Below, one piece after another: positions 4,617 to 38,609 of a DNA stretch of 64,000 nucleotides. This DNA comes from Fimbriosthenelais zetlandica (lineage: Eukaryota): contig OZ365116.1 in NCBI GenBank assembly GCA_977030845.1, positions 13,144,001 through 13,208,000 of the forward strand, read 5' to 3'. Position numbers and translations under genes: made by a program. The stretch's first letter is position 1; each line of letters opens with the position of its first letter. Below the pieces are notes generated by a model. That model ran no database searches and was not told where the DNA came from. It was given only the letters and a program-made list of their open reading frames with translations.

Positions 4617-4653
4617 ATGGACGAAGTTACAGCAGCTAAAATACAACGTTATT
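4617..4653 (+). CDS. ANKRD6: Candidate alternative first coding exon A of ANKRD6 (MDEVTAAKIQRY)
   Basis: ataATGG start, 12 codons + 1 nt, then a T|GTAAGT donor. Phase 1 matches the acceptor at 38476. Short, so a chance occurrence cannot be excluded. Confidence 0.4.
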
Positions 4654-6105
4654 GTAAGTATTACTAATACCTTTATTGTACTAATTCATTTTATCCCTGA
4701 CTGTTTTGGAAGCGTGCCATTTGGTTTCTGCAGCAAACATTTTGATTAATTTCATTTCCTTGTAAAAGCTGTTATACTGGCGGTTTGGAATAACTGAACT
4801 CACATATCCTGCAGGTGATATGGGAGTAAGTTACAAAAACGTCAGGTTTTAATAAGATCCAGAGAGATGATTGCCGGGGCCAATTAGGACAGTTTGTTTA
4901 ACCGAGCAGAGAACATTGATACATTAGATAATTGGTCTCTGTTAATTGTATAATTGTCTAAATCGACCCAGAACGGTGATGGCGCAATTATATCCCCATT
5001 CATTTCTCCCAAGAAACACTCCCAATGGTTTATTGCACGTTATATTTCATAATTCAGAGAGAAACGTTTAATTTTAATTTTGCTAATTCACCATGAATGC
5101 ATCAACTGAATACATTCATACACAAAACACTTAACATCTTCGTTATATTGACTTCTGTGGTCGATTCCGTTTGTTTCATATACATTTGGATGTTGCTAAG
5201 AATAATGTTTCACAATACATTATTATTGGATAAAGATTATGAGGTATAACCGAATTTTCGGAAATACTATGGGGATTATGATATTAATAATAATTTAAGG
5301 ATAATTATTTTATCCATGTCAATGCACCTATGTCTTATAATTGTGGTCCGTACCAGTCAACCGTATACAAAAATGTACTGGTGTATTTGGGACTAAAACT
5401 TATGTTCCCGAACATTCGTTACCACCCCCTCCCCTATCCATTGTGAAACATTCACAGTTTATCCAATAATTAGCACCAATAATAAGATATACCCCATGTC
5501 ATTAACTAATGATGCGTTATATAAATGCCCGGATGCTACAAGCATTACTTCGGCTTTTAAAATACTCATACGCTTTATTCTGTCGTTAAGTCCTGAGTTC
5601 AGATCAGCATCTTCGTTGAATTCATTAGCTCACTCTGCACTTCTCTCGTCGGGAGCTTTTGTGTAGCTTCTCATTCAGACTTTTGTCATGGCCATCTTAA
5701 AGCATTGGTGTGAAGCTTACTATACAAGCCTGACCACTCACTGAAACTATGTATAGACCATGACAGCGGCCATTGTCCGAATTTAATTAGGGGGTGTCCA
5801 GCGTCATGGTCTGGTTGGGATGGTAACCATTTCTTTTACCTTGAATGTCCGCAAAATCAATGATTCCTATACTAGGGTACTTAAAAACCCAGTGGAACAA
5901 TCTCTCAAACGATTTTTAGTTTTCTTATTTGAATTCTAAAATGAATAATGAATTATTATTTGAGAATCCTACAGCCAGAAAATGTATTACATTAGAAGCC
6001 ATATGGATTATGGTTATTGTGATAATTATCATTCATATTTTGAAGTATTTTAGGGGGTTCATTGCATAGCATTGTTTATTCCCAAACTTGAATGGTTACT
6101 AGGAA

Positions 6106-6117
6106 CTTAGAGTAAAA
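6106..6117. mobile_element. Half copy of the CTTAGAGT palindromic element
   Basis: TAGGAA-CTTAGAGTAAAA-TAGGAA: a single arm between 6-bp direct repeats. Confidence 0.5.
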
Positions 6118-6199
6118 TAGGAATAAAAATTGAGCTAGAAATATATCCTGGAAGAGTATTCATCACTTTTCCATAAGCACACAGCTACTTCTCCAGGTG

Positions 6200-6250
6200 A
6201 GGGCGTTCCCCGAGCACGTGACCTGAGACGCGCGCTCTCATTGGACGACT
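6200..6250 (+). promoter_or_regulatory. CpG-rich promoter-like cluster upstream of exon B
   Basis: E-box CACGTG at 6215-6220, ACGCGCGC at 6228-6235 and reverse CCAAT (ATTGG) at 6240-6244, about 250 nt before ATG 6495, in an otherwise CpG-poor background. Confidence 0.5.
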
Positions 6251-6494
6251 CCAGAAATGGAGGGGATTTTGAAATGCTTATCCATGAGACGCAGCTGTCG
6301 TCTGCGGTGCCGGGCTATAGGCGTGTATACAGTATAGAGCTCTACTACTGACCTAGCGGAACACATGCCTGCCCCCACCACAACACACACACCACACACA
6401 CTGGCCAGCACCGGCCCAGTCAGGACCATAATACCGACTAAAGGAGTACGAACGTGAACATTATTAAGGATTTTAAAAGAAAAAACACAGGACA

Positions 6495-6639
6495 ATGTGG
6501 TACAACGGTGAACATCGTGGACGGCCTAAATATGGGAGTAATTTACCAGCCAAAAAGCCGAGATCTAGAGGGGAATACGAAGGTGGTTTATCATCGGAAA
6601 GTGAAGTTTCTGATGATGACTATGATACAGAGAGTATGG
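6495..6639 (+). CDS. ANKRD6: Candidate alternative first coding exon B of ANKRD6 (48 aa, acidic Ser-rich end)
   Basis: Reads MWYNGEHRGRPKYGSNLPAKKPRSRGEYEGGLSSESEVSDDDYDTESM, then a G|GTAAGT donor at 6640. Phase 1; promoter-like cluster just upstream. Confidence 0.65.
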
Positions 6640-8432
6640 GTAAGTTGGATTTTAGACTGATATACTTGAACGATTGTGGCACGCGCCTGGTCGTGGACTC
6701 AATGTTTGACTTCTTATCGCCTTATCTTTGAAGTAAATCCTTGTGTCTATATGTATAGGGATGATAGGTCGCGTGCAAAGGATTTATCACAAACTTGTGG
6801 CCTCATATATGTTGAGGTAGTCTTCTATTTTTGACTCAAAACATTGGTCAGCAGGCAATGGTATTAAATTGCAGGCCATTGACCAGTCGTATTAATAGTA
6901 ATACACATGGTCCTTTCAAAGCTTCAACTTTTGTAAATGATTAATTTCTTGAATGAAAAAATATCTGACCCCTATCAGTCGAAATGGACACGTATATAAC
7001 CGAGCGTAGATTAATTAAATTCATTTGAATCTAAGATATGAGAAAGTGTTGAGACATATGAGAAAAAAAATTATTATTCGTCTAAGGTGACTTTACTTAA
7101 GACTAAGGCAAGTCTACCACTTTTATAGTTTGACAGTTGGACTCCAACCCACACCAACAGATGTTTTCTTCGTGACAGTTAGCCTTATGACGTCATTTAA
7201 GCATCATTTGGTAGTAGGTTTGGGCTGCTGCTAACAACAAATTAACTCCTTTCTTTCAATAATTAGCTGACAGTTAACAGGCAAATTAGGAGGGGGACAT
7301 ATTAATACATTCCCTGCTATCATGACATAAAATGAATAATTATTATAATGAAATGACTTATCACATGCAGTCTTCTATACGACTTATCTGAACTTTCTAA
7401 AGGTGAAAACTGTTTGGATTCTCCAAGAATTAGTGGAGTTATGGACATTCAAAGTTGCACACCTGTCAACATTTGGGATGAAAGGCTTAACCTTAGCATG
7501 CCTAAGGGATGGAAATCTCTTTCAATGAAATCTTGTGTCAGTAATGTCCACTGCAAGGAATTTATGACCCACTCAATTCCAGTTTTTCTGACCTTTTGTA
7601 TATCCTTTGATATTTGCTTTTTCTTAGCCCATTTTTATAATGCCAGCCATATAAGTATATGAAACATGACTACATAACTTGGAGGTTGGACAATACACTT
7701 TGTCTTCCGAGCCTGTTTTATATCAAATGCCTTAAAAGCCTTAGCCAGACTTGAATTTTATTGTACTCATTTTCTGGATGGCAAGTCTTACCCCCCTCAG
7801 TCATAATGATGAGACAAGGTGACAAATAACGTTACAAAGCCGGGGGCTGGCCCCCGACTCGTCCTATCACTTCACTCACACCTACTCCAACTTTTATGAG
7901 CCCCTATAAACATTACACAGGGGACCACAAAATGGTTGAGGCCAACCGCAAAAGTTATTCAAATATTGAATTGTACTACTTTTTTAATTGCCTTTGGGTC
8001 AATTAACATGGGATATAAAGTGTTTTTTGGGCAATAGAGGTGATATGTTCAATTGAAGAACTACAAATATGTATGGGATGTTATGGCATTTTAGTCGTTG
8101 GAGGTTAAATTCAGGTGCTTGACATATACTCAAGTGAAGGCACGTCCGTTGGCCATTGTGACCTCTATATTTTAGTTGCCATGGTTACGACATGAGATGA
8201 CCGAGCCCCCATATGACAACCAGTCAACCTTCTATACTCGACTTAAGAGGAGAAGAGTATTCCGTAACATCTCTGACAGAATTAAGTCTTTAAATGGGAA
8301 TATGTGTGTTATATTATTAATGTCACTTTCCCCCCAAAGATTCATATAGTTGATCCTCAGATTGTATAAGACTTGTAGTTCAGAAGATAGTGTTCTTTAA
8401 TGCTTGGTACATTATAAAGTCATTATCTATAT

Positions 8433-8462
8433 CTTAGAGTCAAATGTTTGTTTTACTCGAAT
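8433..8462. mobile_element. Ultra-short palindromic transposon scar, 7-bp TSD TCTATAT
   Basis: TCTATAT-CTTAGAGTCAAATGTTTGTTTTACTCGAAT-TCTATAT. Confidence 0.75.
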
Positions 8463-10221
8463 TCTATATAAAACATGCCACTCCTTTATGCAGGCTATGT
8501 CTCTCTCAGGCCCATCCTCTACGATTTGTTCACGTTTGATGTGAAAAGAGTATGCCTCTAGCTATAGCTCTTTTATTTTGGAGTTAATGCTGAAAATCCA
8601 GGGTCGATATGGGCCGGGGGCATACACATATTTCATCATATACCAACATGTCATATTCCCTACAGAACTCCCTCACTTTATCGACCAAACTCCCATCCAT
8701 AATCTCTGTAATGTTAATCACTTTCTGTCACGATTTGACAATAGTCAAAATCACTTCTCTTGAAATCCAATTCATTGGAATTACTTTTCCAAGTGTGTTG
8801 AGGTTGCATGTTTTTGTGACATGCCAGATTTCAGACGTTTTTGTATTGACAGAATGTGTTTGAAGCATTTTTAATTGATTATTTGGATAAGCTTCCACCA
8901 TAAAAGATGTATATAGAAGAATTTGAACTTGTCAGCATTTTGGTTACACCCGGGCCTGGGCGAAAGGTGAGAGAAATATGGCACATAGATGACCCCTATG
9001 TTTGGCTAGCTTTAAGTGCAATTGAATCTGGCATCATGCTGTAAAGCCCAACTGTGCTGACAACTCAATCAAATCCTGTCAAAAACTATGGCAATAACAT
9101 GGAAATGCTTCTACCATTAAAATTGTGATACTTTTAATATGACATAGCTAAATGTAGTTTCTGGAAGTTGAAGTTCATATAGTTCGTGTAAGAATGATGA
9201 GTTGGGTGATGGAAGAAAATGGATGAATTCAATGGAAAGTTGTAAACTGTCAAGTAAGAATCAGATGGGATTGTATACAGCAATATGCTTTTCTAGGTGA
9301 GAAAGGATATTTGAATTATTGAGGTACCTTTTATGGAGCCAGATACAGGTTAATCCATATGCTAATAAAGCAGGTTAGATCAAAGCCAGACTATCTCATA
9401 TATCTCATCAATGGCCCCGATCAATACTAATATAACAAAGCAATGACAAATACTTTATGGCATCAAACTTTCATGGACCTGACAGTCAATTTTCCACTCA
9501 TTTATGAGCAAATAAATTCATGCAGCATCCGCAGGTGATAACCACAAAAAGATGCACCAACTTTAACTACAAAAAGATGCACTAATTAGTGTGTTATAAC
9601 ATCAAAGTTATAATTAACCGCATTCCTCCCAATTAAAGCTAGTGGTTCACATGTAACATTGCCACTATTTTCATATGCGTAATCCTCACCTATCTCAGGG
9701 GCATTAGTGGCTTTCTTTCTTCTTTAAATTATATTCTCAGCTTCCTAACTTCAAAGGCTCTAATCCTGTTTATCGCACTATTCGTATTGTTCACAGATTA
9801 ACGGTATGTCCTTTTTATAATCTTCGGAAATAATAAAGAGGATATATGATATTTTGAGGTATTGTTTGTCGCGGCTGGAAGCAAAATTATGATATTAACA
9901 TCAAAGCTTTCCTTCAATGTGGAATAATAATCTGTTCTCTATGTCTTAACCCGCATATTGGGATTTCCCGATGAATTAATTCACCATACAATACTCTAAG
10001 AAGTATACCATTAAGAACTTCCCTATACCACAATACAAGAATTCATACTTGATTTCCGTTAATTTCATGCCCTCCAAGACAACAATCAGCCAGAATAATA
10101 TTATGTATGGCCCATGCCTGTGGCTGTTTGCCTTTGTCGTAGGAGTATAAAACAATTTCTGTTTTTCTGTTGGGGGACAAAGGCATGTTGTATTATTGCT
10201 TCCGTCCCGGGCCATTGTGGA

Positions 10222-10291
10222 ATGATCTCGCGGATTAGTAGGTGTAAGGGGATCCGACTATCAAACCATTACCTACCACCAACAGCCTCAG
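10222..10291 (+). CDS. ANKRD6: Candidate alternative first coding exon C of ANKRD6 (MISRISRCKGIRLSNHYLPPTAS; upstream in-frame ATG at 10114)
   Basis: Open frame ending at a CAG|GTGAGG donor (GT at 10292), phase 1. No homology recognised. Confidence 0.35.
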
Positions 10292-11175
10292 GTGAGGAAA
10301 TTGGTAGAACAGTACACTTAAATGCATCTTTTTTTCTTTTCTCTCTATTTTTGTCTACCCTAGTCGTATAACCAACACTACTGGCTCTTATTGCAAGTGT
10401 TATATTTGCCTCCTGCCAGAGGGCACTGACCAATGGTCAAGTGTCCACCTCTCAAGTTCACCTGTAAAAGCCCTTTGACCGTTTTACACCTTAGTGAACC
10501 CATCTACTTTCCCGGTCCTTTAGCTAGAAAAGATATCATTGCTTGGACTTTATTTTAGTGCTTTAAAGTTTGGGTTTCGCGCTAAGAGATAGAAGAGTGG
10601 AGCAAAGGTGAAATTGGTAGACGCAGTAAAAAAATAAATAAAACCATTATGGGTCATATGTTTGCAATGAGTACTGTGGCAGGTCAGACCTAGGGGTTAC
10701 CTTTTGTTGCCCCTAATGGACACGGCCCTGACAGATGTTGGTCAACTGGTCAGTTACAGGTGTCAGATGCCCACAGGGAAGGTCCAGTGGAGGGGTGGGG
10801 GAGGCTGGGGGGTGGTCAACAGAGGGTGACCACTTCCACACCTATGTCCACTGCACTGACCCGCCCCCTATTTGAAAGAACACAAAACAGTGTCTTTGAA
10901 AGTCCTCCTGATGATGGGGGAGGTTAGTCATCGTCGGATGGTTACTTGTGTGCCTGTCACATAATTAGACAAGCCTTGATTAAATCTTTCTTAATTAATG
11001 ACTGCTTCACCTGAAGGACCATCTTAGGCCACGCGCCCATTACAGACCACGGGGTGCCGGAGCCAGTGTCCAAATGGGACCAGATTTCAGGTCCAAACAC
11101 GGCTGGGTTCTTTAAAAATAAGATTTGTTTTAATATTTGTTTTTATTCTTAAAGAACCATTTTCATAGATATGAC

Positions 11176-11198
11176 CTTAGAGTAAGATACACTCTAAG
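11176..11198. mobile_element. Ultra-short palindromic transposon scar, 7-bp TSD ATATGAC
   Basis: ATATGAC-CTTAGAGTAAGATACACTCTAAG-ATATGAC. Confidence 0.82.
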
Positions 11199-11764
11199 AT
11201 ATGACATTCCATGGTATAGAATACCATTTTGTCTCTGACCATTCTGTGGTTAACCGCAAATACTTATACATACAAATATATACACCTCAATGGGCAAACG
11301 TATACATAGCACTTCTGGCCACAAAAGTGTGCCCCTTGGGCTTAGCCTACATTTTTTGGTCTTCCCACTTATGTGCCTCATTTGGAAAGAGTCTATCACT
11401 TCTAGTCCTAACAAAAACAAAGTATTCGCTCTAAAATATATTGGGACCATTTTCAAATTGAGACCATTGTGCTGATGTTTCCTCTTCTCCCGCCAATACC
11501 GCCGTACGTTGAGACATTGTGGCGGTTCCGTCTTTTGAACCCTGGTGATTAATTGTCGTTTAGGGCAGCAGGTGTCACGTCGATCAGCAGGTGGGTGGGA
11601 TGGGTAGTGAATGCTTGCACTGCTTGCTTTAGTAGACAAGGTGATCATCTGCCCTGGGTTTGCTACATGGGTAAAGCTTCTCATATTTCTCACCTGTCTC
11701 AAAACCAATAGTAACGTTCAAGTAGGCCTAACCATCCACCTGCATTTTTATATTATGCTGACAT

Positions 11765-11788
11765 CTTAGAGTAAAATGAAACTCTAAG
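11765..11788. mobile_element. Ultra-short palindromic transposon scar, 7-bp TSD CTGACAT
   Basis: CTGACAT-CTTAGAGTAAAATGAAACTCTAAG-CTGACAT. Confidence 0.82.
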
Positions 11789-11925
11789 CTGACATAGAAA
11801 GAGGAGAATTGATGGGTAAAGAAGCCATTTTTTATCAGAACCTTTTCCCTGATAATCTTGTCCCTTGGTTATTGTTGCTACAATATTGTACATACACATG
11901 ACTACCTGAAATACGATGATGTAGC

Positions 11926-11949
11926 CTTAGAGTAAAATTTTACATCAAG
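11926..11949. mobile_element. Ultra-short palindromic transposon scar, 7-bp TSD ATGTAGC
   Basis: ATGTAGC-CTTAGAGTAAAATTTTACATCAAG-ATGTAGC. Confidence 0.8.
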
Positions 11950-14900
11950 ATGTAGCGTATCGGTTGAATACAATGTCCCTATAAATACAAATTATAGAAC
12001 CCCCTTCTTCCAGCATTATAAAGACTCCTTTTATATAAAGGAAATACGTTCACAAATAAATGAATTTGAAGAAATGACCCCTAGGATTAAGGTCTCTGTT
12101 GAAGGTTGCTTCAGAAGCCCTTTTGTGGCCAGCCAATGAGACTATGTGTTTTTGCTGGACCAGCAGAACTGATGAAGCGAGATGAGAATGAGGGCAATCC
12201 TTTCATCATTATTGATGATGACAAACGAGTTGACAGAAACTAATTGACTCGTTAGCTCTCAGATTCACATTACCGGTATAAAGAAACTTGAGATCCTTTA
12301 TACTAGGTTTACATCTTTGTTTCTGTTAAGTTGGCAAGGTGATAAGATGAGTTTTCTTATTCATGAGAAATCAAATCCATCTAGGTTTACTAAAAGGGCA
12401 CTAAGGAATGCTAAGACAGATTGGAAACAGGAAACAGATTGGATTGCAGAAAGAAACATGATGTTTGAGATAACATTATTTTAGCTTGTAGCTATTTGTA
12501 TCATTTGGCTCCCGTGCTTCTTCCATTAGGCTCCCGATTAAACAAATTGTTGTCAAGGAACCGATCTATCATGGTAGCAGCCGGTGTGATGTGAAGACAG
12601 GCACCATCATTATTGTTTCCTCTCAACACACCAGGTGGCGTGGCAGGCAGGCAAATGTGTGACCCAACTTAATAATGAATCCTCGCTCTGTTTGGACTCG
12701 GAGGTCGGGTCATTTTGGGTTCAGATATACCAGGGGATGGTGAGAAATAGCCGTGAGTTAAATCTACGAAGTAGACATTGAGTCAGAGAAAATGGACGTT
12801 TTACCCAGAAATAGAAGGGTAAAATATGTATTAACCAATACAGTAATATTCTTTTTAGGTTTCCTGAAATAAAGAAGATTGAGGGGCCTATTTGAGTAGG
12901 AGAAAGTTTCGTTTGCCTGTGAAGGTACGGAAAGTGTTGACCCTAGCGGTTGGCCTAGGTATCACTTAGTGTAGCCGTTTGCCACTATGTGGCAGCAGGG
13001 AGGCAGGACCAGTAAATTATCAGATGGCCTTAAATCATGTGAAATCATGTTTAAATACCAATGAGTGGAAGTATCTGCCAATTGTTAGACGACTCTGTTG
13101 GAGGAATGTTTATGTATAGAATATTAATATTGATATTCACATAAAAAATACTATATTTACGAGCTGTACCGTCCAGAAAAACTGTATGAATGTACACATG
13201 AACCTTTTGTTCAGACTAGTGTACAAACATACCAAGATGTGAATAGCACCAGCACGAATCCCCAGGCTATCCCGTCTGTAACAAATTCTATATAAACCTG
13301 CACCCCTTACTACTCTCCTCTACCTATTGACAAAGCCATGTTGGCGCTACAGGTGCCTTGGGGGAAAAGTGCCTTAGGGATTCTTTGTGATGCAAACCTG
13401 ACTGACTCACAAGCACCACTTAATAATATATACCGAGTTAGCAAGGGGAAACTTGTGAATCAAATGGAATTGAATTCCAGACTTTCAATAGTCTCCCCTT
13501 GACTACTTTACATAGGAGTTGTATATGAATTGATCCTTTGTATTGAATGCACCTCTCTTGATTTAATGTCTACTGCTAATGATTAATATTCAAATTTAAT
13601 GCGGGTAAACTACTATAGTGCCTACTTGATATAAGTGCATGTGTATTGTGATTCAGAATAATAGGATAATTGGAGGAAACTCGGGAGGTAGCTATGTATA
13701 AGCATTAGTGTTCGTTTGCCACTATTGAATATGCATACCTGATAACAATGCTTTTGACACCCATTGTTCTATTGAGAATTAAGATGGAAATGAAAGATAC
13801 AGTCTACATTTTATAATAGAAATCTGCTTTTGGTATAAGCAGTAATCCTATATGGAGTCCCGTGAATTAAGAAACTCAGCTTAAAAAGTTCATTCAAACA
13901 GGGACTAAGATTGTACTGTATTCCATATAATTAACACTATGGTTACGTTTAAAGCCTGGGGCATAATCCCGTTGACACAGCTTTATTCTGTTTGCTTGAT
14001 GCACCAGTAATTCGCAACCCTTTCCCCCTACACCCCCAATTCCTCTCCTAATGAGCAAGTATTCATTCTATTTACTCTAATTACTTTAATCATATTAATT
14101 ACCCCCGGCGTTCGACCTCCATCTTTTGTTACATTCCCCATTGGATTACCAACTATGCTTTGTGTTTTTCAGTAATACTCACAATTAAGGTTTAACCGGA
14201 GGCATTTTCCATAGATCTTCATACCTCGAGATAATCAACTGGAGTTTAATTTATAGTCTGTGGAGTGCCAGATTACTTTGAGCTTGTTTACAAGATCAAA
14301 GAACCAGAACCGAACTCTGCATTAGGATCTTTTAGCCAGCAGTTGATATCTGAATGCCTCTGTAGAAATCTTGAGGAAATTGACTTAAAATGGTCTCAAT
14401 TGGAAGGCACCATTGTGGTCCTTCCAAAATTAACCCCAAATGCATGTTCTTTCCTTTTCCATCCCCTTTCCAATAGACTCTGTACCCCTCTAAACGGAGC
14501 ATGTCCACGGGTCCACAATTCACACCTGGATACCCCACCTGGCGTCTACCTCTGTCATTAACAGCCAGGAGTTTTATATATCATGATATATGACCTTCAT
14601 ATATAACGTTATATACATGTTATATACATGTACATGGCTCTGGCCAATAACTCCCACTCCCTACTGCCAAGAACACCACCTGTACTCATGCGTGCCATGT
14701 CAACATATCAATTACCCATTACAATTATCAACTGTACTCATGTGAATTTACTGCTAAACATGCAAATTCTGTGCTGATTAGATAACCCCATTTACAGCAA
14801 AAAATGCAAACTGATAATCATTGCCCACCTATGGCCTGGAGAGGCCATTTTCTATCCAGTTAAAAAATATATATTTCTAAGACCATGCTCTGTTAGTGAG

Positions 14901-17900
14901 AAGCCTTTGAGTTAATCTTCAATGGAGTGATAATAAAGAACTTGTGAATGGGTATAAGAGAATATGGGACTCCTGACAGAGATCCAAAAGCTTGAGTAGA
15001 CCATGAATATTTGGGTTGTCAGGATGCAACCATGGTTGGCACTCTTTTAAGTCTACAAGTATAGGAAGATCAACCAACCTGCGTGTGTGGAAAATATGTT
15101 CATATTCTACTTACACGCATCACCTAATACCTATAGATCAAAGGATTACCACAAAAATGTTAAAGGTTTTTTCCTTACAGAAATTGCTTCGAATTGTCAC
15201 AAATTCCTTCTTGAATTTCCATGTAAAATGATCGGTTATGAGATATCATCAACTCGAAGACTATTATTGTAAGATCTTAAGGATCAAAAATACTTGTAAA
15301 ATGATAGCTTATGTCATATCGTATTACCAATATTGCTATTGGATATTACTATGGGAAAAAATCCCCTCAAGCTACCTCCGAGTCTCAGTTTAACTAGGTA
15401 TCTGACCCTTTTTCTACCCCAGAATATGCAATATATCTATACCCCTTTTTCCTACTGTTGAACTTTGATTCCCATCACCGCTGGGGGTGCTCTACTAACT
15501 CTAGTAACTTGTGAGCTGGCAGCTGTGATCTACCTGTGAAAGAGGTGTGTGGTGGATGCAGCTTTAACTGGCACCCTCACTAGCTGAAGTGTGGGCCATG
15601 TGGAATATATAAAGAGTATGGGAGGAGAAGGAAGAGAAGGGAAGGGATAGCAAGAGAGATTGATATGCTCTAGAGCCTACATAACACCATGAGGTCACAA
15701 CTATATAGACCATTCTTACGGATTTAAGATTGATCATTGTTACGTTTGGACATTATCAAAATCATTGGTTCCTCTAGATCTTCAGGTGAAAGAGATACAC
15801 AATTGTCACATGGAAGTGTCTAGTTGCCATGACTACAGATTGACACATATTTGTATGAATGAAAGTCCCCCAGTGTATATGGAACCCATTGACCCAGGCC
15901 CCAAGTGTATGTAGGGAGAGAAGGAGTGAGTGAGGCATCTATATAGCCTTAAGTTCTCATAACATGTTACCACTTGGTTGAGTGAGTACTCTTTCTGACT
16001 TGACTTAATAGCTTAATCCAGACTTGGGCATTCACACAGTCAACATTAAGCTGGTTTGGGAGTATGTATACAAACTTATAACATCACATGGATGTACTAG
16101 TGAAGGAGGTGGCTTCATGGCCATTTACATGAAGGATTTACATGTGTCTGGAGCATGTGGAGGGGCACATCCATGCACCTATCCCTTCCTGTGTTCCTAC
16201 TTCTTAAACCTTGGACAGAAAGTACCTAATATTCCTTAGCTGACCATTTCCAAGCAATTTCCTTCAGTTGCATCAATGCTTCCAATTGAAATTTCTCCAT
16301 AACATATTTCAATGGGATCGTCAGGTGGATGATGACTTTGTGGTCTTGTACCTGGGTATGTTAGGTCACCTCCAGGGCTTACCTGGCCAGGTGAGATGAG
16401 TGGATACCTGCCGGTTACCTTGAAGTTCCATATGTTAACCCATCACCTGTGGACACGAGATGATTTACTCAGAGCTCCTGACATGACAAAAACACTGCCT
16501 CATACAGGTGGGAAGTGTTAGTGGATAGATTCAGTCCCTGGTCAGACAGGTGGGCTATATAATACCATATATATAACCAAAAAGAAAGATACATCTCCAT
16601 ATATAGAGATACAGTGAAGCATTCAATATGAATGTGGTAAAATTGATTATGGATTATATTATGCATCGGATCCATATTGAACATTGTCTATAGACCACAT
16701 CGGTCAAGGGAGATCAATACTCTGTGCTCTTTTTCCCCCAGTCTGGGAACTTCAGAGGAACTGCTGGATCAATCGATAAAGTATCCACCACACGTTTCAC
16801 TGAGCCTGAAGAAGACCTGGTGTATATGTGGGAATCACCTTTATTGATTACCTGTGGATTGTATTGGGGATCTGACTCGCAGATATTAACTTTGTTTATA
16901 ATTGAGTCAAGCATTGACCTATGAGATCGGGTGCTGAATATGGATTATATATCGGATTTGGCCTGGGTCAAGTGCAGTATATTGTTTTATGATGGTATAA
17001 ATTTGCTAAATTCCAAGTGGCATTGACATTTGTGTTAAACAAAGCAATAAACAATTGTCCTTAAAAGCCCCAGGAATTGACTTATGGGATCATGTGTTTA
17101 ACAGGGCCTGTTGGGTTTCTGCTGAAGACACAATCGAATTAAATATTGATTCTTATTCTACTGCAACTAACTGAAAGATCAGATGAATGAAGGTCAATAC
17201 AGAATTGTTATTTTGGAAGTCTTGTCCTTGCATATCGATCTAACAAGTGATGTGTGTCTAGCATGATAGATTCAATTACATTAATGTCTCCAGCCTACAG
17301 ATTAATACTGGATTATCTGATTGACATCATCGATCACCTACAGCTTTTGTCTGATTTACCTGCCCGTGCCTCAAGCAACAGACAGTCCCATTCAATGCTA
17401 ACAATCCACAGATACACATGGGTATTTTACAAGTGACTGAATTTGCCTTTGACAAATACACTGTATCAATGTGAATATTAGGACATTTCCCACTCTCCCA
17501 TCATCAGCATAGCTTGGAGTGTATCCTGGATTCTTATTTTACTGATTCATTATCTTTGCATGACTATCTGCACAACAGACAACACAAATAGTTGTCAGGG
17601 AATTCCTGGATTGCCTAGCATTACGCCCTTATAAAACATCATTGACATTATTATGGAGCTCTAAGGGCACTGGAGACACTCGTTATATTAAACCATTTAT
17701 CGATAAAAATCGTTAGTCATTGATGAAAAATTAACATCGGTGAAATTATCCTGCCTTTGTGGAACGCCATGGAGATGTATGAATGATTGATCTGCTTTTA
17801 ACAAGGCTTGTGGTGAATGTTCCCCAGTGCAACTGATCAATCCAACCTTCCTCAAAAACTCAAGTCTACGTTTCCTGCAGGCTTTCTTTGTCTTTGAGCT

Positions 17901-19104
17901 CTAATTACTCGAGACAGTTTCTTGATGATTCTCTATCAGGCAATGGGACACTTACGTCTAGCCCTCAGCGATACCAGAATATATCTACCTGAATTTCTTT
18001 GAGTTTCACCTGTTTCATTCTAATCCCAGGAAAATCAACTTAATTCTTCCCCACTTAACTCTACCTGCCTATATTGAGTCTGTTTAAAATCCAAAAAGGA
18101 TTTAATAGCAAGGAGAGAAAGTCTTTCTTTTCATTGTGGATTTGGGGTTGGTTTATAGACAGCACTTGTCTGCTACATCCATTGTTACCTGAGAATTGAC
18201 CATTCATCACTATTCACAGATAGCAATCACCACTTGAAGAAGGTAGAACCAGCCAGGTGAGACAGATACAAGGTGGTCATCGGGGCTATAAGATAGCATC
18301 AATCCTCCCCCTCTCCCTCTGGCTATTAGCCCTGGCCACTTATACAGCCAGACTGACAATTGACATCTTATTTTGTGCTCAACTGTGTGCTTTAATCTTT
18401 TGATGGCCACAAGTGTGAATCTAGATCTGATACATAATTGGATAACTATCAGCCTCTTGCTTTATAAGGCTCAATTATCTGAAGCCAGACTTCAAATGTT
18501 GTTGACAGTTCCCTCAATAGGATTGATCTTAAAAATAGGACCGGTTTGAGAGATGCATTGATAGGAATTAAATGGGAAATGTCACTTCAAAACTTTGAGT
18601 TCATTTGAAGGGAGTTTGAATCCTGATTCGGCGTAGTGGAGGTCAGTTGAGGTTCAGTAAGATTGATTGGTCAATGTTCAAGGTTGGTGTTGTGTTTAAG
18701 CATCGACCAGGGGAAGTAAGAGGGAGGCCTATCCCTGCCTGACTTATTGCATTTGTCTGTTCATGACAAAGCCCCCTGGAGTTAGCATTGGTGCCATGGT
18801 TACCAGGCTTGGAGGCTGAGGAACAGTATTTGTATGGCGGGCGGCAGGTGGTGATAGTGGGCAGGTGGGGGGGGGGGGAGTTGAGGGAGTGCACCTACCC
18901 ACCATCCACCCTCCCCCCCTCCCCCCTCCCACCTTCTCCAATTGTATTGATGTGTGCTGCATGTAAAACACCTTCAGTAGGCAGGAGAGGTGCATGTTGT
19001 TAGGATTAACTCTCATGGAGTGAAACATGCTGGAATTAAACCATCACGCATCAGACCAAACATTTCAACATGGATTAAAGTGATTATATCAATATTACAA
19101 CAAG

Positions 19105-21709
19105 ATGGAGTCCCGCTGGAATATCTTTAAGAGATCCAAACGGAAAAAAGTGAAAGGCAATAAGGGAAAGAATGCTGAAGAAGGCAACGTAGGTGGGCTG
19201 GCTAATACGATATCATGTGGGACGTCTACTACACATGGAGCTGCTGGGAGTATCAGGGGTGGTCCTGCTTACCATGCTCCACACCCTACAGGTTACAGGG
19301 CTACAGTGAGTCCCAGACCTTACAGAGAAGTATCCCCTACTGTGTATAAACCCCCACCCGGGGCATTCAGTTATAACCCACCCCCTGCCCCTAGTAGAAA
19401 TGTCTGTGATGATGTGACATTACCCGTGAAATCTAGGCATGATAGCCTTAACGATTTGTCAAGTTGTTCCGAGTCTGTTGTCGTTGCGACTTGTCTTAAG
19501 AGAAGTCGTAGTCAACCTAGTGTGAACGGTGCCTCGAAAAGACAATCAAAACCAGTCAAAAGGGAAAGTGATACGAACAGAACCCAGCCCAAGAAAGCTG
19601 GACTTGGTTCCTGGCTGAGAAAATCCCTGAGGAGATCAAAATCAAAAACGGATGTATCTAGTCAACTAAAAGCCGAGGAAGATGCCAGAGACCAGGAGGA
19701 ATATGCAGGGGGTGCAGATAATTGGGGTGTGCAGAAACTGACTCGATCTGTAAGCACGAGTGTGGTTAGCAACATACCACCAAACCACCAGGGACATATG
19801 AGTATGTCTCCTGGTGCCATGGTTCAAACTCCTGGTCGAGACGGCCATTTTGGAAAACCTAGATTTGAAGGCAGGGATGTCACTTTTCATTCTTTACCTG
19901 CCAGCAGGCCATATGTTCTCCCATTGCCACCAAGACCTAAACATTTCTCTCTTCCTCCAACCCCCTCTCAGGCAATTGAGCAGGGGCAAGCTGAGGGTCA
20001 TTTAAGAGACCAGAGGAACAGCTCCATTGGTTTGATGAGGGGTACTCAAGCCTTCATGTCACAACAAGTTACAAATACCCTTCAGAAAGGTCAACGGGGA
20101 TCAATCCAAAGTGGTTCGACTCCAGGACCACTTCAGAGCCAACCTGTGTTAGATCTCAGTGCTGTTCAAACCCAAAGGTCATACCATCGAGGCGGACACC
20201 TCTCTCCTGGGTCAACTTACAGACCCGGGAAGCAAAGAAATTTAGAGGTATCACAGACAGTGACAGACAGACCACCTGTTTCACCCCGAACTAAAATACC
20301 TCAGACATATCTGCCTCATGGCAGCTCTCCCAGGTCCCCAACTACACCTGGCCAAAAGTTCCGAAGCCAAATCGGTTCTCCTAAGTCCCAACAAATGCCT
20401 ACCTCCACAAGTACCCCGGTTCTAAAACCAAGGCCAACACGTAAATCTAGCTACACAAATTCCTCGAGTGTGACATCAAAAAGTCAGAGTTCAGACTGCC
20501 CTTCTAGCATTGCTCCCTCCCCTCCAATATCACAACTTGGTCCCAGGTCTCCAACTGGGAAAGGTCCTGATTATTTGACTGTACCACAAGCTAGTCCAGT
20601 AACCAAAAAGATGGGACACCCTCGCAGTAAGAGTGCAGAGGCCAGAAGCTCCCAGTCTCCTCATCCCACATCCAGTTTAGCAAGTTCCACAGTGTCCTCT
20701 GCTGCAGGCAACAAATGGTCTCGTGAATTGCCCCCACTTCCTCCAAAGCGCCATAGCCTGGCAAGTACTATATTAAGTCTAACCACCACAGAGAGCGTTT
20801 ATCATCAAATAAATGACGAGAATGTTCCCCCTGGTGGTAGAAATTACCCAGGGTTACCATGGAGGCCTCCCCACAGTCCAGTCAATGATCATAGTGGCTC
20901 AGTTGACGCCCTAGAGCACCAGCCTGTCATGGATGACTTTGGTTACCTGAATCCACAAGGCGGAAACCCCATGTGGGGCCTCAATAAAACCCGACCCATC
21001 AGGCCTGGGCTGCAGAGGGCAGTTTCTCACTCTGTCCTTGATCAAGTTGGCAGAGGTGGGAAACAAAAATATAGACATAACCCACAGTTTACTGACCTTG
21101 ACCATGTCCGGTCAGCCATGGACCTCACAACCATACCTCAAGAGGAGGAACTCAGTCCCAGCTTCCTAAATAAAAAGAGAAAGGTGCTCTCCCGAAGTAA
21201 TGCATTTAAAACCCCGGGTGAGCCAATTCAGAAATCGAAGTCATATCATGACATGGCATCCAAGAAGGAAGCCCGAGCTCTCCTGAACAAGAAAGTCTCT
21301 GAAACTCAACACCACTATCGTTCACAGCCTGAGTTTGGTGGCCCTGGGATCCAAAGTCGTGAGAGTTTAGCTTTTAAGCCCCTGTCACACACGTCATCGG
21401 ATGATACATTAAGCTCATGTTCTTCTGATAGTGACCTAGGTGTTGAGGAGCGACGTCGCTTATCAAGACGTCGCAATAAAAGAAGACGACCCAAACGTCG
21501 CTCAGCCTCTTATAATAACATTACAGAGGATAGTAGGACAAGGGAGAATTGGCCAGGAGGGCCAGACATATCTGGTGAATCGTCATATATGTTACGACGT
21601 TGGTGGGCCACTCTAGATGATATTCCTACTGCAGTTTTACGAGATGGGAAGTCATTGACTCAGCAGGATTCATCCATTGACAGTGGGGATGATGCTGATG
21701 ATGGAGATG
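19105..21709 (+). CDS. ANKRD6: Giant 868-codon Ser/Pro/Arg-rich disordered exon D, probably an alternative N-terminus of ANKRD6
   Basis: 895-aa ORF from the track; an in-frame TGA at 19081 precedes the ATG. Coding-like composition ends at a G|GTAAGT donor (GT at 21710, phase 1), after which the ORF tail is intron-like. Phase is compatible with exon 38476. Linkage to ANKRD6 is inferred. Confidence 0.75.
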
Positions 21710-31551: not shown

Positions 31552-31595
<44 letters not shown>

Positions 31596-34141: not shown

Positions 34142-34295
34142 ATGGCAAATTCAGGAGGAACTGGAGGAGGGCTTGATACTAGTAATCCCCTTCAAATGTC
34201 CCTGGATGAAGGGGAGGGGTTCAGCTACCAGGAGTCGGTATCTGGAGGCCCTCCCCCACCCCCTCCAGGGGATAATACCCTGGAAATATCCGCAG
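34142..34295 (+). CDS. ANKRD6: Candidate alternative N-terminal coding exon E of ANKRD6 (51 aa, polyproline)
   Basis: Reads MANSGGTGGGLDTSNPLQMSLDEGEGFSYQESVSGGPPPPPPGDNTLEISA, then a CAG|GTGAGG donor (GT at 34296), phase 1. An upstream acceptor ctgatttgtaccctag| starts the exon at 34114. Confidence 0.7.
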
Positions 34296-35274
34296 GTGAG
34301 GCAAATAGACATCGGTACTTTAATGAGAGAAACGGTTAAAGCGTCGGTGACCACTTTTAAAATCTAGACTAATTCCTATTCACAGACATTTTAATGTAGC
34401 TAATTAACAAAATATCTTGAGGCATGCCATTTTCTGATCGTAAGTGATCGTAGATAGAAAGGGTTCACTGATAATGTTTGGTGGTGAGTGGGTGGGAGGA
34501 GGTATTAAGGAGGTCCAAGTCCAGTCAGTCTGCCAGGATACCCCTGATAAAATGACTGATATTATCAGTTAATACAATCAGCGGTTAGAGGGTATACTGC
34601 ATGCCATGTTATAAAAGGAAGGTCTCCACTGATGAAGGCATGATAAGACATGTTGTCCATGGCAACCATGTGTTTGTATAGGGAGGTCAGGAACAATGAC
34701 ACACAGTCCTATCTCAGTGGTCTGATATGGATTGATAATGGCAGATGGGACGAACGTGAACAGGCATACTTTTCCGGTCTAAATGCTCCATATTCTGTGT
34801 AAATCATGCAATAAAAGGGCTTAAAATTCCATGTCAAGGTCTGTACCAAATTTCCAAGGAATCATATGCATGATAATTAACAAATCTGACCATTCACTGT
34901 TGACTTGGTCGATCCTTTGGCGATCACCCTCCTTCAAATCAAACCAAAGATAATTGTCCATTGTGACTATTTTAATATGCTGCCATTTTCATATTTTACC
35001 CTGATTTTAGACATCTTGACTTCAACGTTCATATTGCTTTAAGCTTTAAGCTTTAGCTGTTATCTTGGGGTGTGCACCAGGTCAATAGGTCATGGTTTAT
35101 CAGCTATATTGATCAGTCTCTCCAGCACGTCTTCCCATCCTCCTAACATGTCACAGGGTTCCTAATTTAATGAGATCTCGTCTTATCTCGCGGTGGCGAG
35201 ATGAAAGCGAGATTAACCACAACTCTCATGTGGTGGGTCTTGATAGAATTTAAATTAATTTATTTTGAGACAAA

Positions 35275-35292
35275 CCCCCCCCCCCCCCCCCC
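35275..35292 (+). repeat. Poly-C homopolymer (18 nt)
   Basis: Direct reading. Confidence 0.9.
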
Positions 35293-35310
35293 ACCCGCAA
35301 TTATATTTAT

Positions 35311-35331
35311 CTTATAGTATTTTACTCTAAG
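35311..35331. mobile_element. Ultra-short palindromic transposon scar, 7-bp TSD TATTTAT/TACTTAT
   Basis: TATTTAT-CTTATAGTATTTTACTCTAAG-TACTTAT; flanks match at 6/7. Confidence 0.7.
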
Positions 35332-35432
35332 TACTTATAAAAGACGATAGCCTGTATGGATAGATGTAGCATTAATATAGCCTAGTACATGATTGTATTC
35401 TACAATGGAATCAATATATTCTGTAATTTAAT

Positions 35433-35463
35433 CGTAGAGTTAAATGATTCATTTTACTCTAAG
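35433..35463. mobile_element. Ultra-short palindromic transposon scar, 7-bp TSD ATTTAAT
   Basis: ATTTAAT-CGTAGAGTTAAATGATTCATTTTACTCTAAG-ATTTAAT. Confidence 0.8.
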
Positions 35464-35527
35464 ATTTAATCAGGTCTATGTGGAATATATGAAATATAGG
35501 GAAGGGTATACATTTGGTTGGTCAGTA

Positions 35528-35551
35528 CTTTAGAGTAAATTTTACTCTAAG
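35528..35551. mobile_element. Ultra-short palindromic transposon scar, 7-bp TSD GTCAGTA
   Basis: GTCAGTA-CTTTAGAGTAAATTTTACTCTAAG-GTCAGTA. Confidence 0.82.
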
Positions 35552-37289
35552 GTCAGTACCATGTGTGACCATGGTAACTGTCCCTCTCACCCAGACAGCG
35601 GGGGTAGTGGACACACACTGGACATTGGTCAGTCAACATTGACCCTGTAACTAGAGCAATGGTCCAGATTGTCTATACCAATGATGGATGGGATAAACAT
35701 CCTTGGTCTCGTTGGTCTCTTTGATGATAGATTTCAATCGGAGTCGCCAAGCAAGTGGAAACGCACTTCTGATTTATGTGACAAATGGGGATTCAATCCT
35801 AATGCATGAGATGCATTACTACGGTCCCTCTCATAAAAATGATTGAGAATTCGAGATGTTTGAACTCTCTTTTAAAACTATACAACCCATATCTATGACC
35901 CCCTTAAGGTATTTTTCTCGAGTGTAGACAAATTACTGAACAATTTGGGGGTCATTGATTTACCTAGGACTGGGGCTTATCGTCGCGTGATCTTCCGTGA
36001 TTTAGCGAGACTTGTCTGTGGTGACCATTTGCTCCTTTCAGCCCTTCTTTCAGAGGTTACGACCTTGAGTTAAGCATCTCAGGTTAGTAATTAGAGAGGC
36101 TGATGGCGATGGCGCTTTATGATAACTACAAGGGAGCCGCCATCAAAAGTCCGACAAAATCAAGACGATATGTATTATCATAGAAGGTCCACCTGAGTAG
36201 AACATCTTTGAAGGACTTCGTCTCATCATATATGTTCCTGATCCCTATTTTACGACATTGTTCCAGGTCCCTATTTTACGACATTTAACACCCTTTAATA
36301 TGTGGGTGCCTGTCCTTGGGACTGTTATGTTAAAAAGAAATTTGAGGTTTTTTCAACAATGGCTGTCAAGAAGGTTAAAAAGATAGGGGAGGATTAAAAT
36401 AATGCCCCAGGCATCAGTTTACACTGATTAGGGACAGATCGTATATAGCTTTCAACTGCTTTCTACTTTGGGAATGCTGTGAGAGCCAGTGTAAAGCCAA
36501 AGACAAGAGGGTGGTCGTATAAAGCTTTATTATGCAAGGGATGAGATTCCCATATATTCATTGATGGTTGTATACAATAGGTATAGGTCCATAAAAATAT
36601 ACGGCATAATAATACATAATGTATGAAGGTTCTATATATGTCTGATACATTGTATGTGTCATCTTTTAGACGTTTTTAAAGTCATTGAGTACGGTATGCA
36701 TTGTTTCAACCCCTCTGGCAGATTCATTGGCAGTTTATCCTATATGTTGTACTGTAACAATAGACAATGCATCAATATAACAATTTATAATATATGTGCC
36801 TTCTATTAGGTCTACCAGCATTGATATTTTCCAGATGTATAAGTAGATTCTCAAAGTACATGTAGTTCCATCTCGCTGACCCTACCGGCAAACAGCATAT
36901 CACTTCCATTGAACTATTTAAGATATAACCTCTCCATATTGTTTACTCTTTAGGGCTTTGACACGTACAGAAACCATAAATACATATTTATATTACATTA
37001 AAGCTTACATAAGGCATAAAAGGTGGGCCTCCCGCTATGCCTTCCCCACTGTGGAGGCTTTCACCCAACATTATTGAACCATAACAGGGCGAGTAAATAA
37101 AATACCTCCCTCAATATATAAAACAGGGCAATCATATATAGGACAGACTTGTGTTTGATCTGAAGTAGGAGACTATTTCTACCAATACTCAGAAGATCCT
37201 ATGTTGACCCTTCATCTGAATCCCTCCTCAGCACTTCCCCCGCTCTTGGGAATCTTTTGTCTCGTTAGGTCTCTACCACCGCGTGAAAG

Positions 37290-37335
37290 GACGAGACTGC
37301 GCGTTATGACACTGCATACGTCACTTCCGGTGATG
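37290..37335 (+). promoter_or_regulatory. ETS-CRE composite promoter element, candidate proximal promoter for the short ANKRD6 isoform
   Basis: ACGTCACTTCCGG at 37318-37330 (reverse CCGGAAGTGACGT) in a CpG-rich patch 1.15 kb upstream of exon 38476, which carries its own ATG at 38481. Confidence 0.45.
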
Positions 37336-38475
37336 TGCTGTAAATGTTTGGGTCTGGGATAAGAATTTAAAGAGATGCATGTTCAAGTAGTGGCTTTAGA
37401 AATGGCTCTTGAGAGGAATTGGCAAACTACTCATATATAAATGGAGAATAAACATTCGCCAAGTTGTCGATCTACTATTTTTCTGTGCATCTCTGAATTT
37501 AACCATGGAGTCGCTATTAACGAAGCAGACTGTATCAGTCACATACTGTGTCATTCACACAAAAGAAGGCCCTAAACCCTGGCTGTTCACTCGCCAGCCA
37601 GCACATGTACAATATTATCCATCTCCATGACTCGCCAGCTGAACAAACTGAATGAAATTTTTATCAGACCTCTCAGAAAGTCTCCCTCCTTTTTCTAGAT
37701 AGTTTGAAAATTTACAACTTGTAATAAACTACGGCTATGTTGACTCCAGTATTTAAAGCCCTCTCGATAATTTAAATTGAATGCTATAAACCTTTAGGTC
37801 TGACCCTGTTGGTTTGACATTTAGAGAAAGATACACAGAAACTATCATGAATTACCAGTGGAAAAATACAAATAACGAAAGAGAAAAGAAGCAAATGTCT
37901 TAAATTATAAAGTACAAATATCGAGACTCTTTTTAACATGCTCCACTTTTACGTGACCTTGTGACGTCATCCTAAACCAAGTTCAGGTCTCCCAATATAA
38001 ATTATTCATGTAATTTTTTCCATCTGATATGTTTCTCTCTCTATCTTTACATCATTATTTTTTATAAACTTTGAGTGGAGGTTCTGGTATTAGTTTAGGA
38101 GGGAAGGTTTGTTTGACTTGACGTGGTCGTCTCTGTTGGCTTTTGATGCTTGGTTTGGTGTGTATAGGGAAAACTCCTACTCACATCACGTTTAGACCCA
38201 TTGCTCTTAAAAAAGGCTAAGGCCCTCCTGCATTCTCTCATATCAAGAATTGCTCCCATCCATCAACTAGGAAAATAAATCTGAACTTATCACTAAAGCA
38301 TCAAAGTTTCCCCTTGGAAAATCGTGGCCAATGGCAATGAGAGACCTCAGTTCTGAAACTTAAAATATACATAATGTACGATAGTTTCAGTGCGTTTTAC
38401 TAGGATTTTTGTACTGTGTTTTGTATATGTGAGTAAATTGATTGATTTTAAATGTATTTTTTCCTCTATTTACAG

Positions 38476-38609
38476 TTTCTATGGCGACGACTGCCAGTTA
38501 CATCCCAGGCGTCTCTCTAGCAGACAAACTCCGCCTAGCTGCCAGTAAAGGTCAACTGGACAAGGTCAAGGAACTGGTGGCAGCGGGAGCCACTTTCGTG
38601 CCAGACAGG
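38476..38609 (+). CDS. ANKRD6: ANKRD6 core exon 1 (ankyrin repeat 1; internal ATG at 38481)
   Basis: ttcctctatttacag| and AGG|GTGAGT; phase 1-0. Reads (V)SMATTASYIPGVSLADKLRLAASKGQLDKVKELVAAGATFVPDR, cf. human [26 protein letters not shown] (recalled). Confidence 0.93.

What the first reader, a model, noticed from the sequence alone, without database searches (positions are those of the whole stretch)
4617..38609. Array of interchangeable phase-1 first exons feeding one ANKRD6/Diego core (variable-exon/constant-core architecture)
Seen: five ATG-initiated segments (4617-4653, 6495-6639, 10222-10291, 19105-21709, 34142-34295) each end at a consensus donor in phase 1, which is what the constant exon at 38476 needs (joined codon V, or F for exon A). 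That exon also has its own ATG (38481), aligning roughly with the vertebrate start. Promoter-like clusters lie at 6.2, 31.7-32.1 and 37.3 kb. The N-termini differ greatly: 12 aa, 48 aa acidic, 23 aa basic, 868 aa disordered, 51 aa polyproline, or none. Established: Diego/Diversin is a core planar-cell-polarity and Wnt adaptor normally described with ankyrin repeats at the very N-terminus. Inference: promoter choice swaps targeting modules onto a PCP scaffold. Caveat: exons A and C were picked partly because they are phase 1, so they are weaker.
Basis: partly seen in the sequence, partly recalled or inferred. Interest (0 to 1): 0.7.

Follow-up and report, generated by a model that had tools for sequence, protein, structure and literature searches.

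The report
ANKRD6 gene with one conserved upstream exon
An invertebrate version of the cell-polarity gene ANKRD6/Diego is preceded by one large, conserved protein-coding exon that probably gives it a long extra front end, but the claimed array of five interchangeable front ends is mostly what chance would produce.

Summary
All five segments exist exactly as described: each starts at an ATG, stays open, and ends at a GT donor in phase 1. The exon at 38476 really is the first coding exon of an ANKRD6/Diego-type gene (38476-48666, + strand, 848 aa).

Such segments are not rarer than chance. The 38 kb upstream holds 16 of them in phase 1, 12 in phase 0, 7 in phase 2, and 6-8 per phase on the opposite strand.

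Only exon D (19105-21709, 868 aa) has independent support. It is conserved in three other species, and two of them could be read at DNA level and keep the phase-1 donor. In a distant relative it lies upstream of ANKRD6 on the same strand. Nothing else between the two is conserved, and the acceptor 5 nt before the ANKRD6 ATG is kept.

D therefore most likely splices to 38476 to give a roughly 1718-aa isoform.

B and E are unconfirmed candidates with coding-like codon usage and nearby CpG-rich patches, but no homologue. A and C are at chance level.

Verdict: an ordinary gene layout with one new lineage-restricted N-terminal extension. Earlier notes on other DNA of this genome recorded similar "phase-matched first-exon arrays", with one exon holding up in two follow-ups.

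The parts
18758..19104 (+). Conserved non-coding 5' flank (5'UTR or core promoter) of exon D. It includes a conserved two-codon upstream ORF, ATG GAT TAA, at 19070-19078.
   Evidence: It aligns at 68% nucleotide identity over 395 nt with L001:3919-4284. The indels are not multiples of three.
19105..21709 (+). Exon D: an 868-codon coding exon for a disordered N-terminal region. It has a conserved start (ME-SRW-FKRSK) and a phase-1 donor, G|GTAAGT, at 21710.
   Evidence: Only 3 homologue clusters were found among 1.84 billion representatives, at 53%, 43% and 36% identity. The donor is conserved as GA(T/G) G|GTA(A/G)GT in L001 and L002, and the frames diverge and stop right after it. Third codon positions differ about twice as often as first or second positions. 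The alignment shows many invariant short motifs. Pfam finds nothing.
38476..38609 (+). First coding exon of ANKRD6 (ATG at 38481, ankyrin repeat 1). It is the shared acceptor exon.
   Evidence: It is 92% identical over 48 aa to the relative. The acceptor and the 5 nt before the ATG are conserved as cag|TTTC(T/C)ATGG in a relative whose introns no longer align.
39356..39454 (+). ANKRD6 exon 2 (one ankyrin repeat, 99 nt, phase 0).
   Evidence: Pfam Ank E=3.6e-8. 89% identical to the relative. Splice sites.
44989..45090 (+). ANKRD6 exon 3 (one ankyrin repeat).
   Evidence: Pfam Ank E=1.4e-8. 89% identical to the relative.
45740..45937 (+). ANKRD6 exon 4 (two ankyrin repeats).
   Evidence: Pfam Ank E=6e-12 with 2 stretches. 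83-86% identical to the relative.
46069..46167 (+). ANKRD6 exon 5 (one ankyrin repeat).
   Evidence: Pfam Ank E=2.3e-10. 88% identical to the relative.
46367..46663 (+). ANKRD6 exon 6 (last ankyrin repeat plus a basic linker).
   Evidence: Pfam Ank E=1e-5. 69% identical over 110 aa to the relative.
46931..47197 (+). ANKRD6 exon 7 (linker). The donor at 47198 is firm. The acceptor is uncertain and could be 46931 or 47084.
   Evidence: Only the last 42 aa are conserved with the relative. Candidate splice sites are listed.
47311..48666 (+). ANKRD6 last exon (coiled-coil and disordered C-terminal part), ending in -GTQV and a stop.
   Evidence: 24 homologues were found, one named ANKRD6 from Nymphon striatum. 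The assembled 848-aa model aligns collinearly with that protein at 41% over 497 aa, E=3e-110.
34142..34295 (+). Candidate first exon E (51 aa). Unconfirmed.
   Evidence: Its codon score of 0.16 compares with a null mean of -0.13 and SD of about 0.15. It lies 0.3-0.8 kb downstream of a CpG-rich patch at 33.3-33.9 kb. No homologue was found. No block in the relative is conserved with it.
6495..6639 (+). Candidate first exon B (48 aa). Unconfirmed, and possibly belongs to another transcript.
   Evidence: Its codon score is 0.20. It lies inside the CpG-rich patch at 4.5-7.2 kb. No homologue was found.
4617..4653 (+). Candidate exon A (12 aa). At chance level.
   Evidence: Short ATG-to-phase-1-donor segments are as common as in control phases and on the control strand. 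Its codon score is within the null range.
10222..10291 (+). Candidate exon C (23 aa). At chance level.
   Evidence: Its codon score of 0.03 is within the null range. An earlier in-frame ATG lies at 10114.

Best explanation
The window holds one ANKRD6/Diego-type gene on the + strand. Its conserved body runs from 38476 to 48666, encodes 848 aa from the ATG at 38481, and has seven ankyrin repeats followed by a coiled-coil and disordered tail.

About 17 kb upstream lies a single large coding exon, D (19105-21709). It has its own conserved 5' flank and start codon. Its conserved phase-1 donor most likely splices directly onto the conserved acceptor at 38476.

That join would put an 868-aa disordered extension in front of the ankyrin repeats, giving a protein of about 1718 aa with the junction reading ...DDGD-V-S-MATT... 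The extension is rich in short motifs: polybasic-aromatic stretches, PxxP motifs and Ser/acidic clusters.

A shorter, canonical protein starting at 38481 is probably also made from a proximal promoter. That transcript could have a non-coding first exon, or exon E as first exon.

Shown:
- D is a real, selected coding exon followed by an intron.
- D and ANKRD6 are collinear and co-oriented in two deeply diverged species.
- No other conserved exon lies between them.
- The frames match.

Inferred:
- The actual splice join.
- The existence of a second promoter.
- Any function of the extension, such as membrane or partner targeting of a polarity scaffold.

The other four 'first exons' are not established. 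A and C are chance; B and E are open candidates.
For: - D is conserved in three other species. The start is conserved in all three, and the phase-1 donor in the two that could be read at DNA level. It also shows a coding-type substitution pattern.
- In the relative assembly ERZ25767047, the D-like exon and the ANKRD6 last exon sit on one contig and one strand, 55.5 kb apart. A second contig of the same sample shows the same arrangement at 56.7 kb.
- I tiled the whole 80-kb relative locus. Only D and the ANKRD6 exons match the window, in the same order, and nothing else matches on either strand.
- Introns do not align at nucleotide level, so what is conserved is under selection.
- The acceptor cag|TTTCYATGG is conserved, and its single change (TCT to TCC) is synonymous in the D-joined frame.
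- The joined model is open for 1718 aa.
- The internal ATG has a weak context (T at -3), whereas the D ATG has A at -3 and G at +4.
Against:
- No protein in 1.84 billion representatives carries D fused to ankyrin repeats. This is weak evidence, because all hits are ORF calls on genomic DNA.
- A very short or fast-evolving terminal exon downstream of D would escape my comparison.
- Phase matching alone has a one-in-three chance.
- Synteny was tested in only one independent species. The third species' contigs gave no DNA, and there D-like and ANKRD6 lie on different contigs of 96/70 kb and 185 kb.
- The flank upstream of D is not CpG-rich, unlike the other putative promoters.
Confidence: 0.55

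Rival explanations
1. D belongs to a separate upstream gene. It would be the first and main coding exon of an uncharacterised disordered protein that finishes in one or more short, poorly conserved exons somewhere in 21.7-38.4 kb. ANKRD6 would start independently from a promoter near 32-36 kb, with a non-coding first exon spliced to 38476.
For: - D has its own conserved 5' flank and start.
- CpG-rich patches at 31.8-33.9 and 35.7-36.3 kb could mark a separate ANKRD6 promoter.
- The ATG at 38481 is conserved and corresponds to the usual start just before ankyrin repeat 1.
- No database protein fuses D to ankyrin repeats.
Against: - No conserved candidate for a downstream exon was found in 44 kb of the relative.
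- The neighbourhood, order and strand are kept across a divergence that has erased intron similarity.
- The phase matches the ANKRD6 acceptor in both species.
Confidence: 0.28
2. Four or five mutually exclusive coding first exons (A-E), each with its own promoter, all feed 38476 and swap N-terminal targeting modules onto ANKRD6.
For: - All five are phase 1 and give open joins.
- None can chain in frame to the next one, because no phase-compatible acceptor lies before their ATGs.
- B and E have codon scores about 2 SD above null ORFs.
- B and E sit at CpG-rich patches.
Against: - Phase-1 ATG-to-donor segments are no more frequent than controls.
- A and C score within the null range.
- B and E have no homologue and no counterpart in the relative.
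- The only look-alike ORF in the relative is not significantly similar (p=0.18).
- A, B and C would need 28-34 kb introns that skip D.
Confidence: 0.05
3. D is constitutive rather than alternative. In this lineage every ANKRD6 protein carries the 868-aa extension, the ATG at 38481 is only an internal methionine, and there is no second promoter.
For: - The acceptor sits 5 nt before the ATG, and the ATG at 38481 has a poor start context.
- D is retained in all three species that have close ANKRD6 relatives.
Against: - CpG-rich patches between D and 38476 exist in both species.
- In other animals ANKRD6/Diego is described as starting at the ankyrin repeats (PMC11414264 for the 6-8 repeat architecture).
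Confidence: 0.12

Closest known systems
ANKRD6 / Diversin / Diego (core planar-cell-polarity and Wnt adaptor)
   Same: It has an N-terminal block of ankyrin repeats, seven here against the 6-8 described (PMC11414264), mostly one repeat per 99-nt phase-0 exon. A long coiled-coil and disordered C-terminal part follows. It is collinear with an annotated arthropod ANKRD6. In vertebrates the ankyrin repeats bind Dishevelled (PMC12381922).
   Different: A conserved 868-aa coding exon lies upstream in a compatible phase. No such extension turned up in the papers I read or in the protein searches. D has no homologue outside three closely related species clusters.
Prickle / Spiny-legs locus of Drosophila
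   Same: It is a core PCP protein made as isoforms that share a common C-terminal body but have unique N-termini. The unique Sple N-terminus binds other polarity proteins and redirects localisation (PMC4764577). This is the closest functional precedent for what D joined to ANKRD6 would be.
   Different: It is a different protein family (PET/LIM, not ankyrin). The isoforms there are experimentally shown, whereas here the join is only inferred. D is far longer and has no recognisable domain.
Clustered variable-first-exon genes (protocadherin and UGT1A type)
   Same: Upstream first exons are proposed to be spliced to one common acceptor.
   Different: Those arrays consist of paralogous variable exons, each with a related promoter. 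Here the five peptides are unrelated in length and composition, and only one is conserved.

Membership tests
ANKRD6/Diego/Diversin | Block of 6-8 ankyrin repeats at the start of the canonical protein | tested here: met
   Pfam Ank hits fall in exons 2-6, with two repeats in exon 4. Exon 1 carries a degenerate first repeat, seen by motif only. The 6-8 repeat figure is from PMC11414264.
ANKRD6/Diego/Diversin | Collinear similarity to a recognised ANKRD6 through both the repeats and the C-terminal region | tested here: met
   The 848-aa model aligns with the Nymphon striatum protein named ANKRD6 at 41% over 497 aa (E=3e-110) and at 48% over the last 66 aa. That name is an automatic annotation.
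ANKRD6/Diego/Diversin | Orthology to human ANKRD6 or fly Diego shown by reciprocal search or a tree | not tested
ANKRD6/Diego/Diversin | Binds Dishevelled, and in vertebrates also CK1-epsilon and Axin | not testable with these tools
   Biochemical property (PMC12381922).
Gene with alternative coding first exons on a shared acceptor | A shared acceptor exon that cannot itself be a first exon | tested here: met
   The acceptor, with its polypyrimidine tract, lies 5 nt before the ATG and is conserved in the relative.
Gene with alternative coding first exons on a shared acceptor | Two or more first exons shown to be real (conserved or expressed) | tested here: not met
   Only D is conserved. E and B have no homologue. 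A and C are at chance level.
Gene with alternative coding first exons on a shared acceptor | Transcripts joining each first exon to the common exon | not testable with these tools
Paralogous variable-exon cluster (protocadherin/UGT1A type) | Variable exons are paralogues of each other | tested here: not met
   The five peptides (12, 48, 23, 868 and 51 aa) share no similarity on inspection. None of A, B, C or E is repeated in the window.

The most novel reading that the evidence does not exclude
In this invertebrate lineage the PCP scaffold ANKRD6/Diego has acquired a fast-evolving 868-aa disordered N-terminal module. The module carries conserved polybasic-aromatic, PxxP and Ser/acidic motifs. 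It would be expressed from its own promoter as an alternative long isoform beside the canonical short one. That would be a Prickle/Spiny-legs-like isoform switch on a second core PCP component, re-targeting or regulating the Dishevelled-binding ankyrin domain.
Probability: 0.35. Interest if true: 0.5.

Novelty: new variant of a known kind. Interest (0 to 1): 0.33.

Why it matters
If D really joins ANKRD6, a core planar-polarity adaptor normally described as starting at its ankyrin repeats would have a lineage-specific isoform. That isoform would double the protein's size and carry conserved linear motifs. It would be a testable case of how polarity scaffolds gain new targeting or regulatory inputs, parallel to Prickle/Spiny-legs. 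It also matters for annotation: without RNA support, gene finders would probably call D as an orphan single-exon gene. The broader claim of a five-exon switchboard does not hold and should not be propagated.

Tried and rejected
- **Rfam** on the whole window found nothing.
- **Pfam and ESM Atlas on D.** Pfam found no family. The Atlas returned only generic disordered-protein look-alikes below the informative score.
- **Homologue searches with the E and B ORFs** were both blank. The length filter of 0.55-1.75 times the query means a full-length E-ANKRD6 or B-ANKRD6 transcript product could not have been found, so these blanks are weak.
- **An E-like ORF in the relative** (rel 43193-43409: ATG, Gly/Pro/acidic-rich, phase-1 CAG|GTGGGT donor) was considered as an E homologue. 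I rejected it because the similarity is not above composition-matched shuffles (p=0.18). Such ORFs are also common there.
- **In-frame chaining of the candidates** (A to B, to D, to E) is rejected, because no phase-compatible acceptor with a polypyrimidine tract lies before their ATGs.
- **A third species** (ERZ26222911: P0003, P0031, P0006) returned no DNA, so synteny could not be tested a second time.
- **The conserved block at 15827-15920** as a coding exon is rejected, because its indels break the frame.
- **Cluster look-ups** gave no names or taxa, so the species remains unidentified. An earlier scan note calls it 'probably worm', unverified.
Full report
**Observation**

The window is AT-rich eukaryotic DNA of about 40% GC with long introns. 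Each starts with ATG, is open, and is followed by GTAAGT or GTGAG(G) with one nucleotide left over. Each gives an open join to 38476, with junction codon V, or F for exon A. The exon at 38476-38609 follows a strong polypyrimidine-AG acceptor and has its ATG at 38481.

**The constant part**

Ankyrin-repeat motifs occur on the + strand at 39.36, 44.99, 45.74, 46.07 and 46.37 kb, each starting at an exon boundary. Pfam confirms Ank repeats in exons 2-6.

An eight-exon model, all in phase 0 and running from 38481 to 48666, gives 848 aa without a stop. It aligns collinearly with the Nymphon striatum protein named ANKRD6: 41% over 497 aa (E=3e-110), plus the C-terminal helix region. The acceptor of exon 7 is uncertain and could be 46931 or 47084. 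So the core is an ANKRD6/Diego-type gene.

**Is the set more than chance?**

No. In 1-38475 the + strand has 62 GTRAG donors. ATG-initiated open segments of at least 30 nt that end at them number 12 in phase 0, 16 in phase 1 (four of these inside D) and 7 in phase 2. The opposite strand gives 6, 8 and 8. The same count in the relative's D-to-ANKRD6 interval gives 11, 14 and 12. Phase-1 compatibility of short segments such as A (12 aa) and C (23 aa) therefore carries no information. C also has an earlier in-frame ATG at 10114.

**Exon D is real**

I ran a search without a length filter against 1.84 billion representative proteins. It found only three relatives of the 868-aa ORF, at 53%, 43% and 36% identity. 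All three are ORF calls on genomic contigs.

- They share the start (ME-SRW-FKRSK plus a polybasic run) and many invariant short blocks in an otherwise variable, low-complexity sequence.
- At the DNA level the two relatives I could read keep the donor in the same place and phase, GA(T/G) G|GTA(A/G)GT. After it the frames diverge and stop within 4-27 codons. That is the signature of an exon-intron boundary.
- Differences against the closest relative are 280, 260 and 511 at codon positions 1, 2 and 3 over 820 codons.
- The 350 nt upstream of the ATG is also conserved with that relative. Its indels are not multiples of three, and it holds a conserved two-codon upstream ORF at 19070-19078. This looks like a 5'UTR or core promoter, so D is a first coding exon.

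**Is D linked to ANKRD6?**

In assembly ERZ25767047 the D-like exon (P0002) and the ANKRD6 last exon (P0005, 68% identical to the window's) lie on the same 3.6-Mb contig and the same strand, 55.5 kb apart. A second contig of the same sample repeats the arrangement at 56.7 kb. That contig is probably the other haplotype, so it is not independent evidence.

I walked the contig with six further look-ups and tiled 80 kb without conflicts. At nucleotide level only exons align. At protein level only D and the ANKRD6 exons match the window, in the same order, and nothing else matches on either strand.

ANKRD6 exon 1 is 92% identical. Its acceptor and the five nucleotides before the ATG are conserved as cag|TTTC(T/C)ATGG, and the one change is synonymous in the D-joined frame.

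So the evidence for a D-to-38476 splice is this:
- D has a conserved donor.
- ANKRD6 has a conserved acceptor that needs an upstream exon.
- The phases match in both species.
- No conserved exon lies between them.

I put this at about 55-65%, not higher, for four reasons. A very short or unconserved terminal exon would be missed. Only one independent species could be tested. A third species gave no DNA, and there D-like and ANKRD6 lie on different contigs at unknown positions.

**Exons A, B, C and E**

None has a counterpart in the relative, although only 10 kb upstream of the relative's D was available for A-C. The E and B ORFs have no homologue among 5.8 billion proteins. The length filter would have hidden full-length transcript products, so these blanks are weak.

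I built a codon log-odds score trained on D plus the ANKRD6 exons:

| Segment | Codon score |
|---|---|
| B | 0.20 |
| E | 0.16 |
| A | 0.15 |
| C | 0.03 |
| Null ATG-to-donor ORFs | mean about -0.13, SD 0.14-0.21 |

B and E are about 2 SD above the null. A and C are within it.

CpG observed/expected has a median of 0.46, indicating a CpG-depleted genome, probably methylated. It rises to 0.8-0.94 at 4.5-7.2 kb (around A and B), 31.8-33.9 kb (just upstream of E) and 35.7-36.3 kb. That fits unmethylated promoters there.

None of the candidates can chain in frame to the next. E is therefore a reasonable but unproven proximal first exon. B may be a first exon of this gene or of some other transcript. 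A and C should be dropped.

**Mechanism (inferred)**

Transcription from the D promoter would yield a protein of about 1718 aa in which a disordered 868-aa arm precedes the Dishevelled-binding ankyrin domain. The conserved blocks of D are:
- two polybasic stretches with aromatic residues and serines (residues 1-25 and about 166-184);
- PxxP motifs (LPPLPPKR, PLPPRPK);
- an invariant stretch of about 40 residues ending in a Ser/acidic cluster (about 738-777);
- a C-terminal SYML-RWWATLDD-P-AVL block.

These are typical of membrane-association, SH3-ligand and kinase-substrate motifs. None of this was tested here. A proximal promoter would give the canonical short form.

**Comparison with what is known**

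Diego/Diversin is described as a cytoplasmic protein with 6-8 ankyrin repeats (PMC11414264). It binds Dishevelled through them (PMC12381922). I found no report of an N-terminal extension.

The nearest precedent is Drosophila Prickle/Spiny-legs. Its isoforms share a common C-terminal body but have unique N-termini, and the Sple-specific N-terminus binds Dachs and Dachsous and redirects localisation (PMC4764577).

This locus is not a protocadherin-type variable-exon cluster, because the candidate exons are unrelated to one another.

**Verdict**

The layout is ordinary: an ANKRD6 gene with one conserved, lineage-restricted upstream coding exon, probably an alternative or extended N-terminus. The 'array' is not supported. 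Earlier notes of this scan on other pieces of the same genome report several similar 'phase-matched first-exon arrays'. Two follow-ups, which I have not checked, each ended with one exon holding up.

Noticed in passing
window 48655-48666, and proteins P0004-P0028: 24 of the 25 ANKRD6 last-exon relatives fetched, and the window's own gene, end in [G/A/S/V]-[S/T]-x-V. Examples are -GTQV in the window, and -ATQV, -GTEV and -ASLV elsewhere. This is a class-I PDZ-ligand-like C-terminus. The exception, P0009, looks like a read-through ORF. A conserved PDZ ligand on a Dishevelled partner would be worth checking.
   Followed up: partly
window 15827-15920 (matches L001:1751-1842): A 94-nt non-coding block 3.2 kb upstream of exon D is 81% identical to the closest relative, and its indels break any reading frame. 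It is probably a regulatory element of the D promoter.
   Followed up: partly
window 19070-19078: A two-codon upstream ORF (ATG GAT TAA) lies 27 nt before the D start codon. It is conserved as ATG GAT TAG in the closest relative, and several other upstream ATGs are nearby. This hints at translational control of the long isoform.
   Followed up: no
whole window: CpG observed/expected is strongly depleted (median 0.46), with a few 0.6-2 kb patches near 0.8-0.94. This suggests a methylated genome with unmethylated islands. The relative shows the same pattern, with a median of 0.41.
   Followed up: no
   Followed up: no
window 1-18000 and 49000-64000: No block conserved with the relative's 10-kb flanks was found on either strand. 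Neighbouring genes, if any, were not identified.
   Followed up: partly
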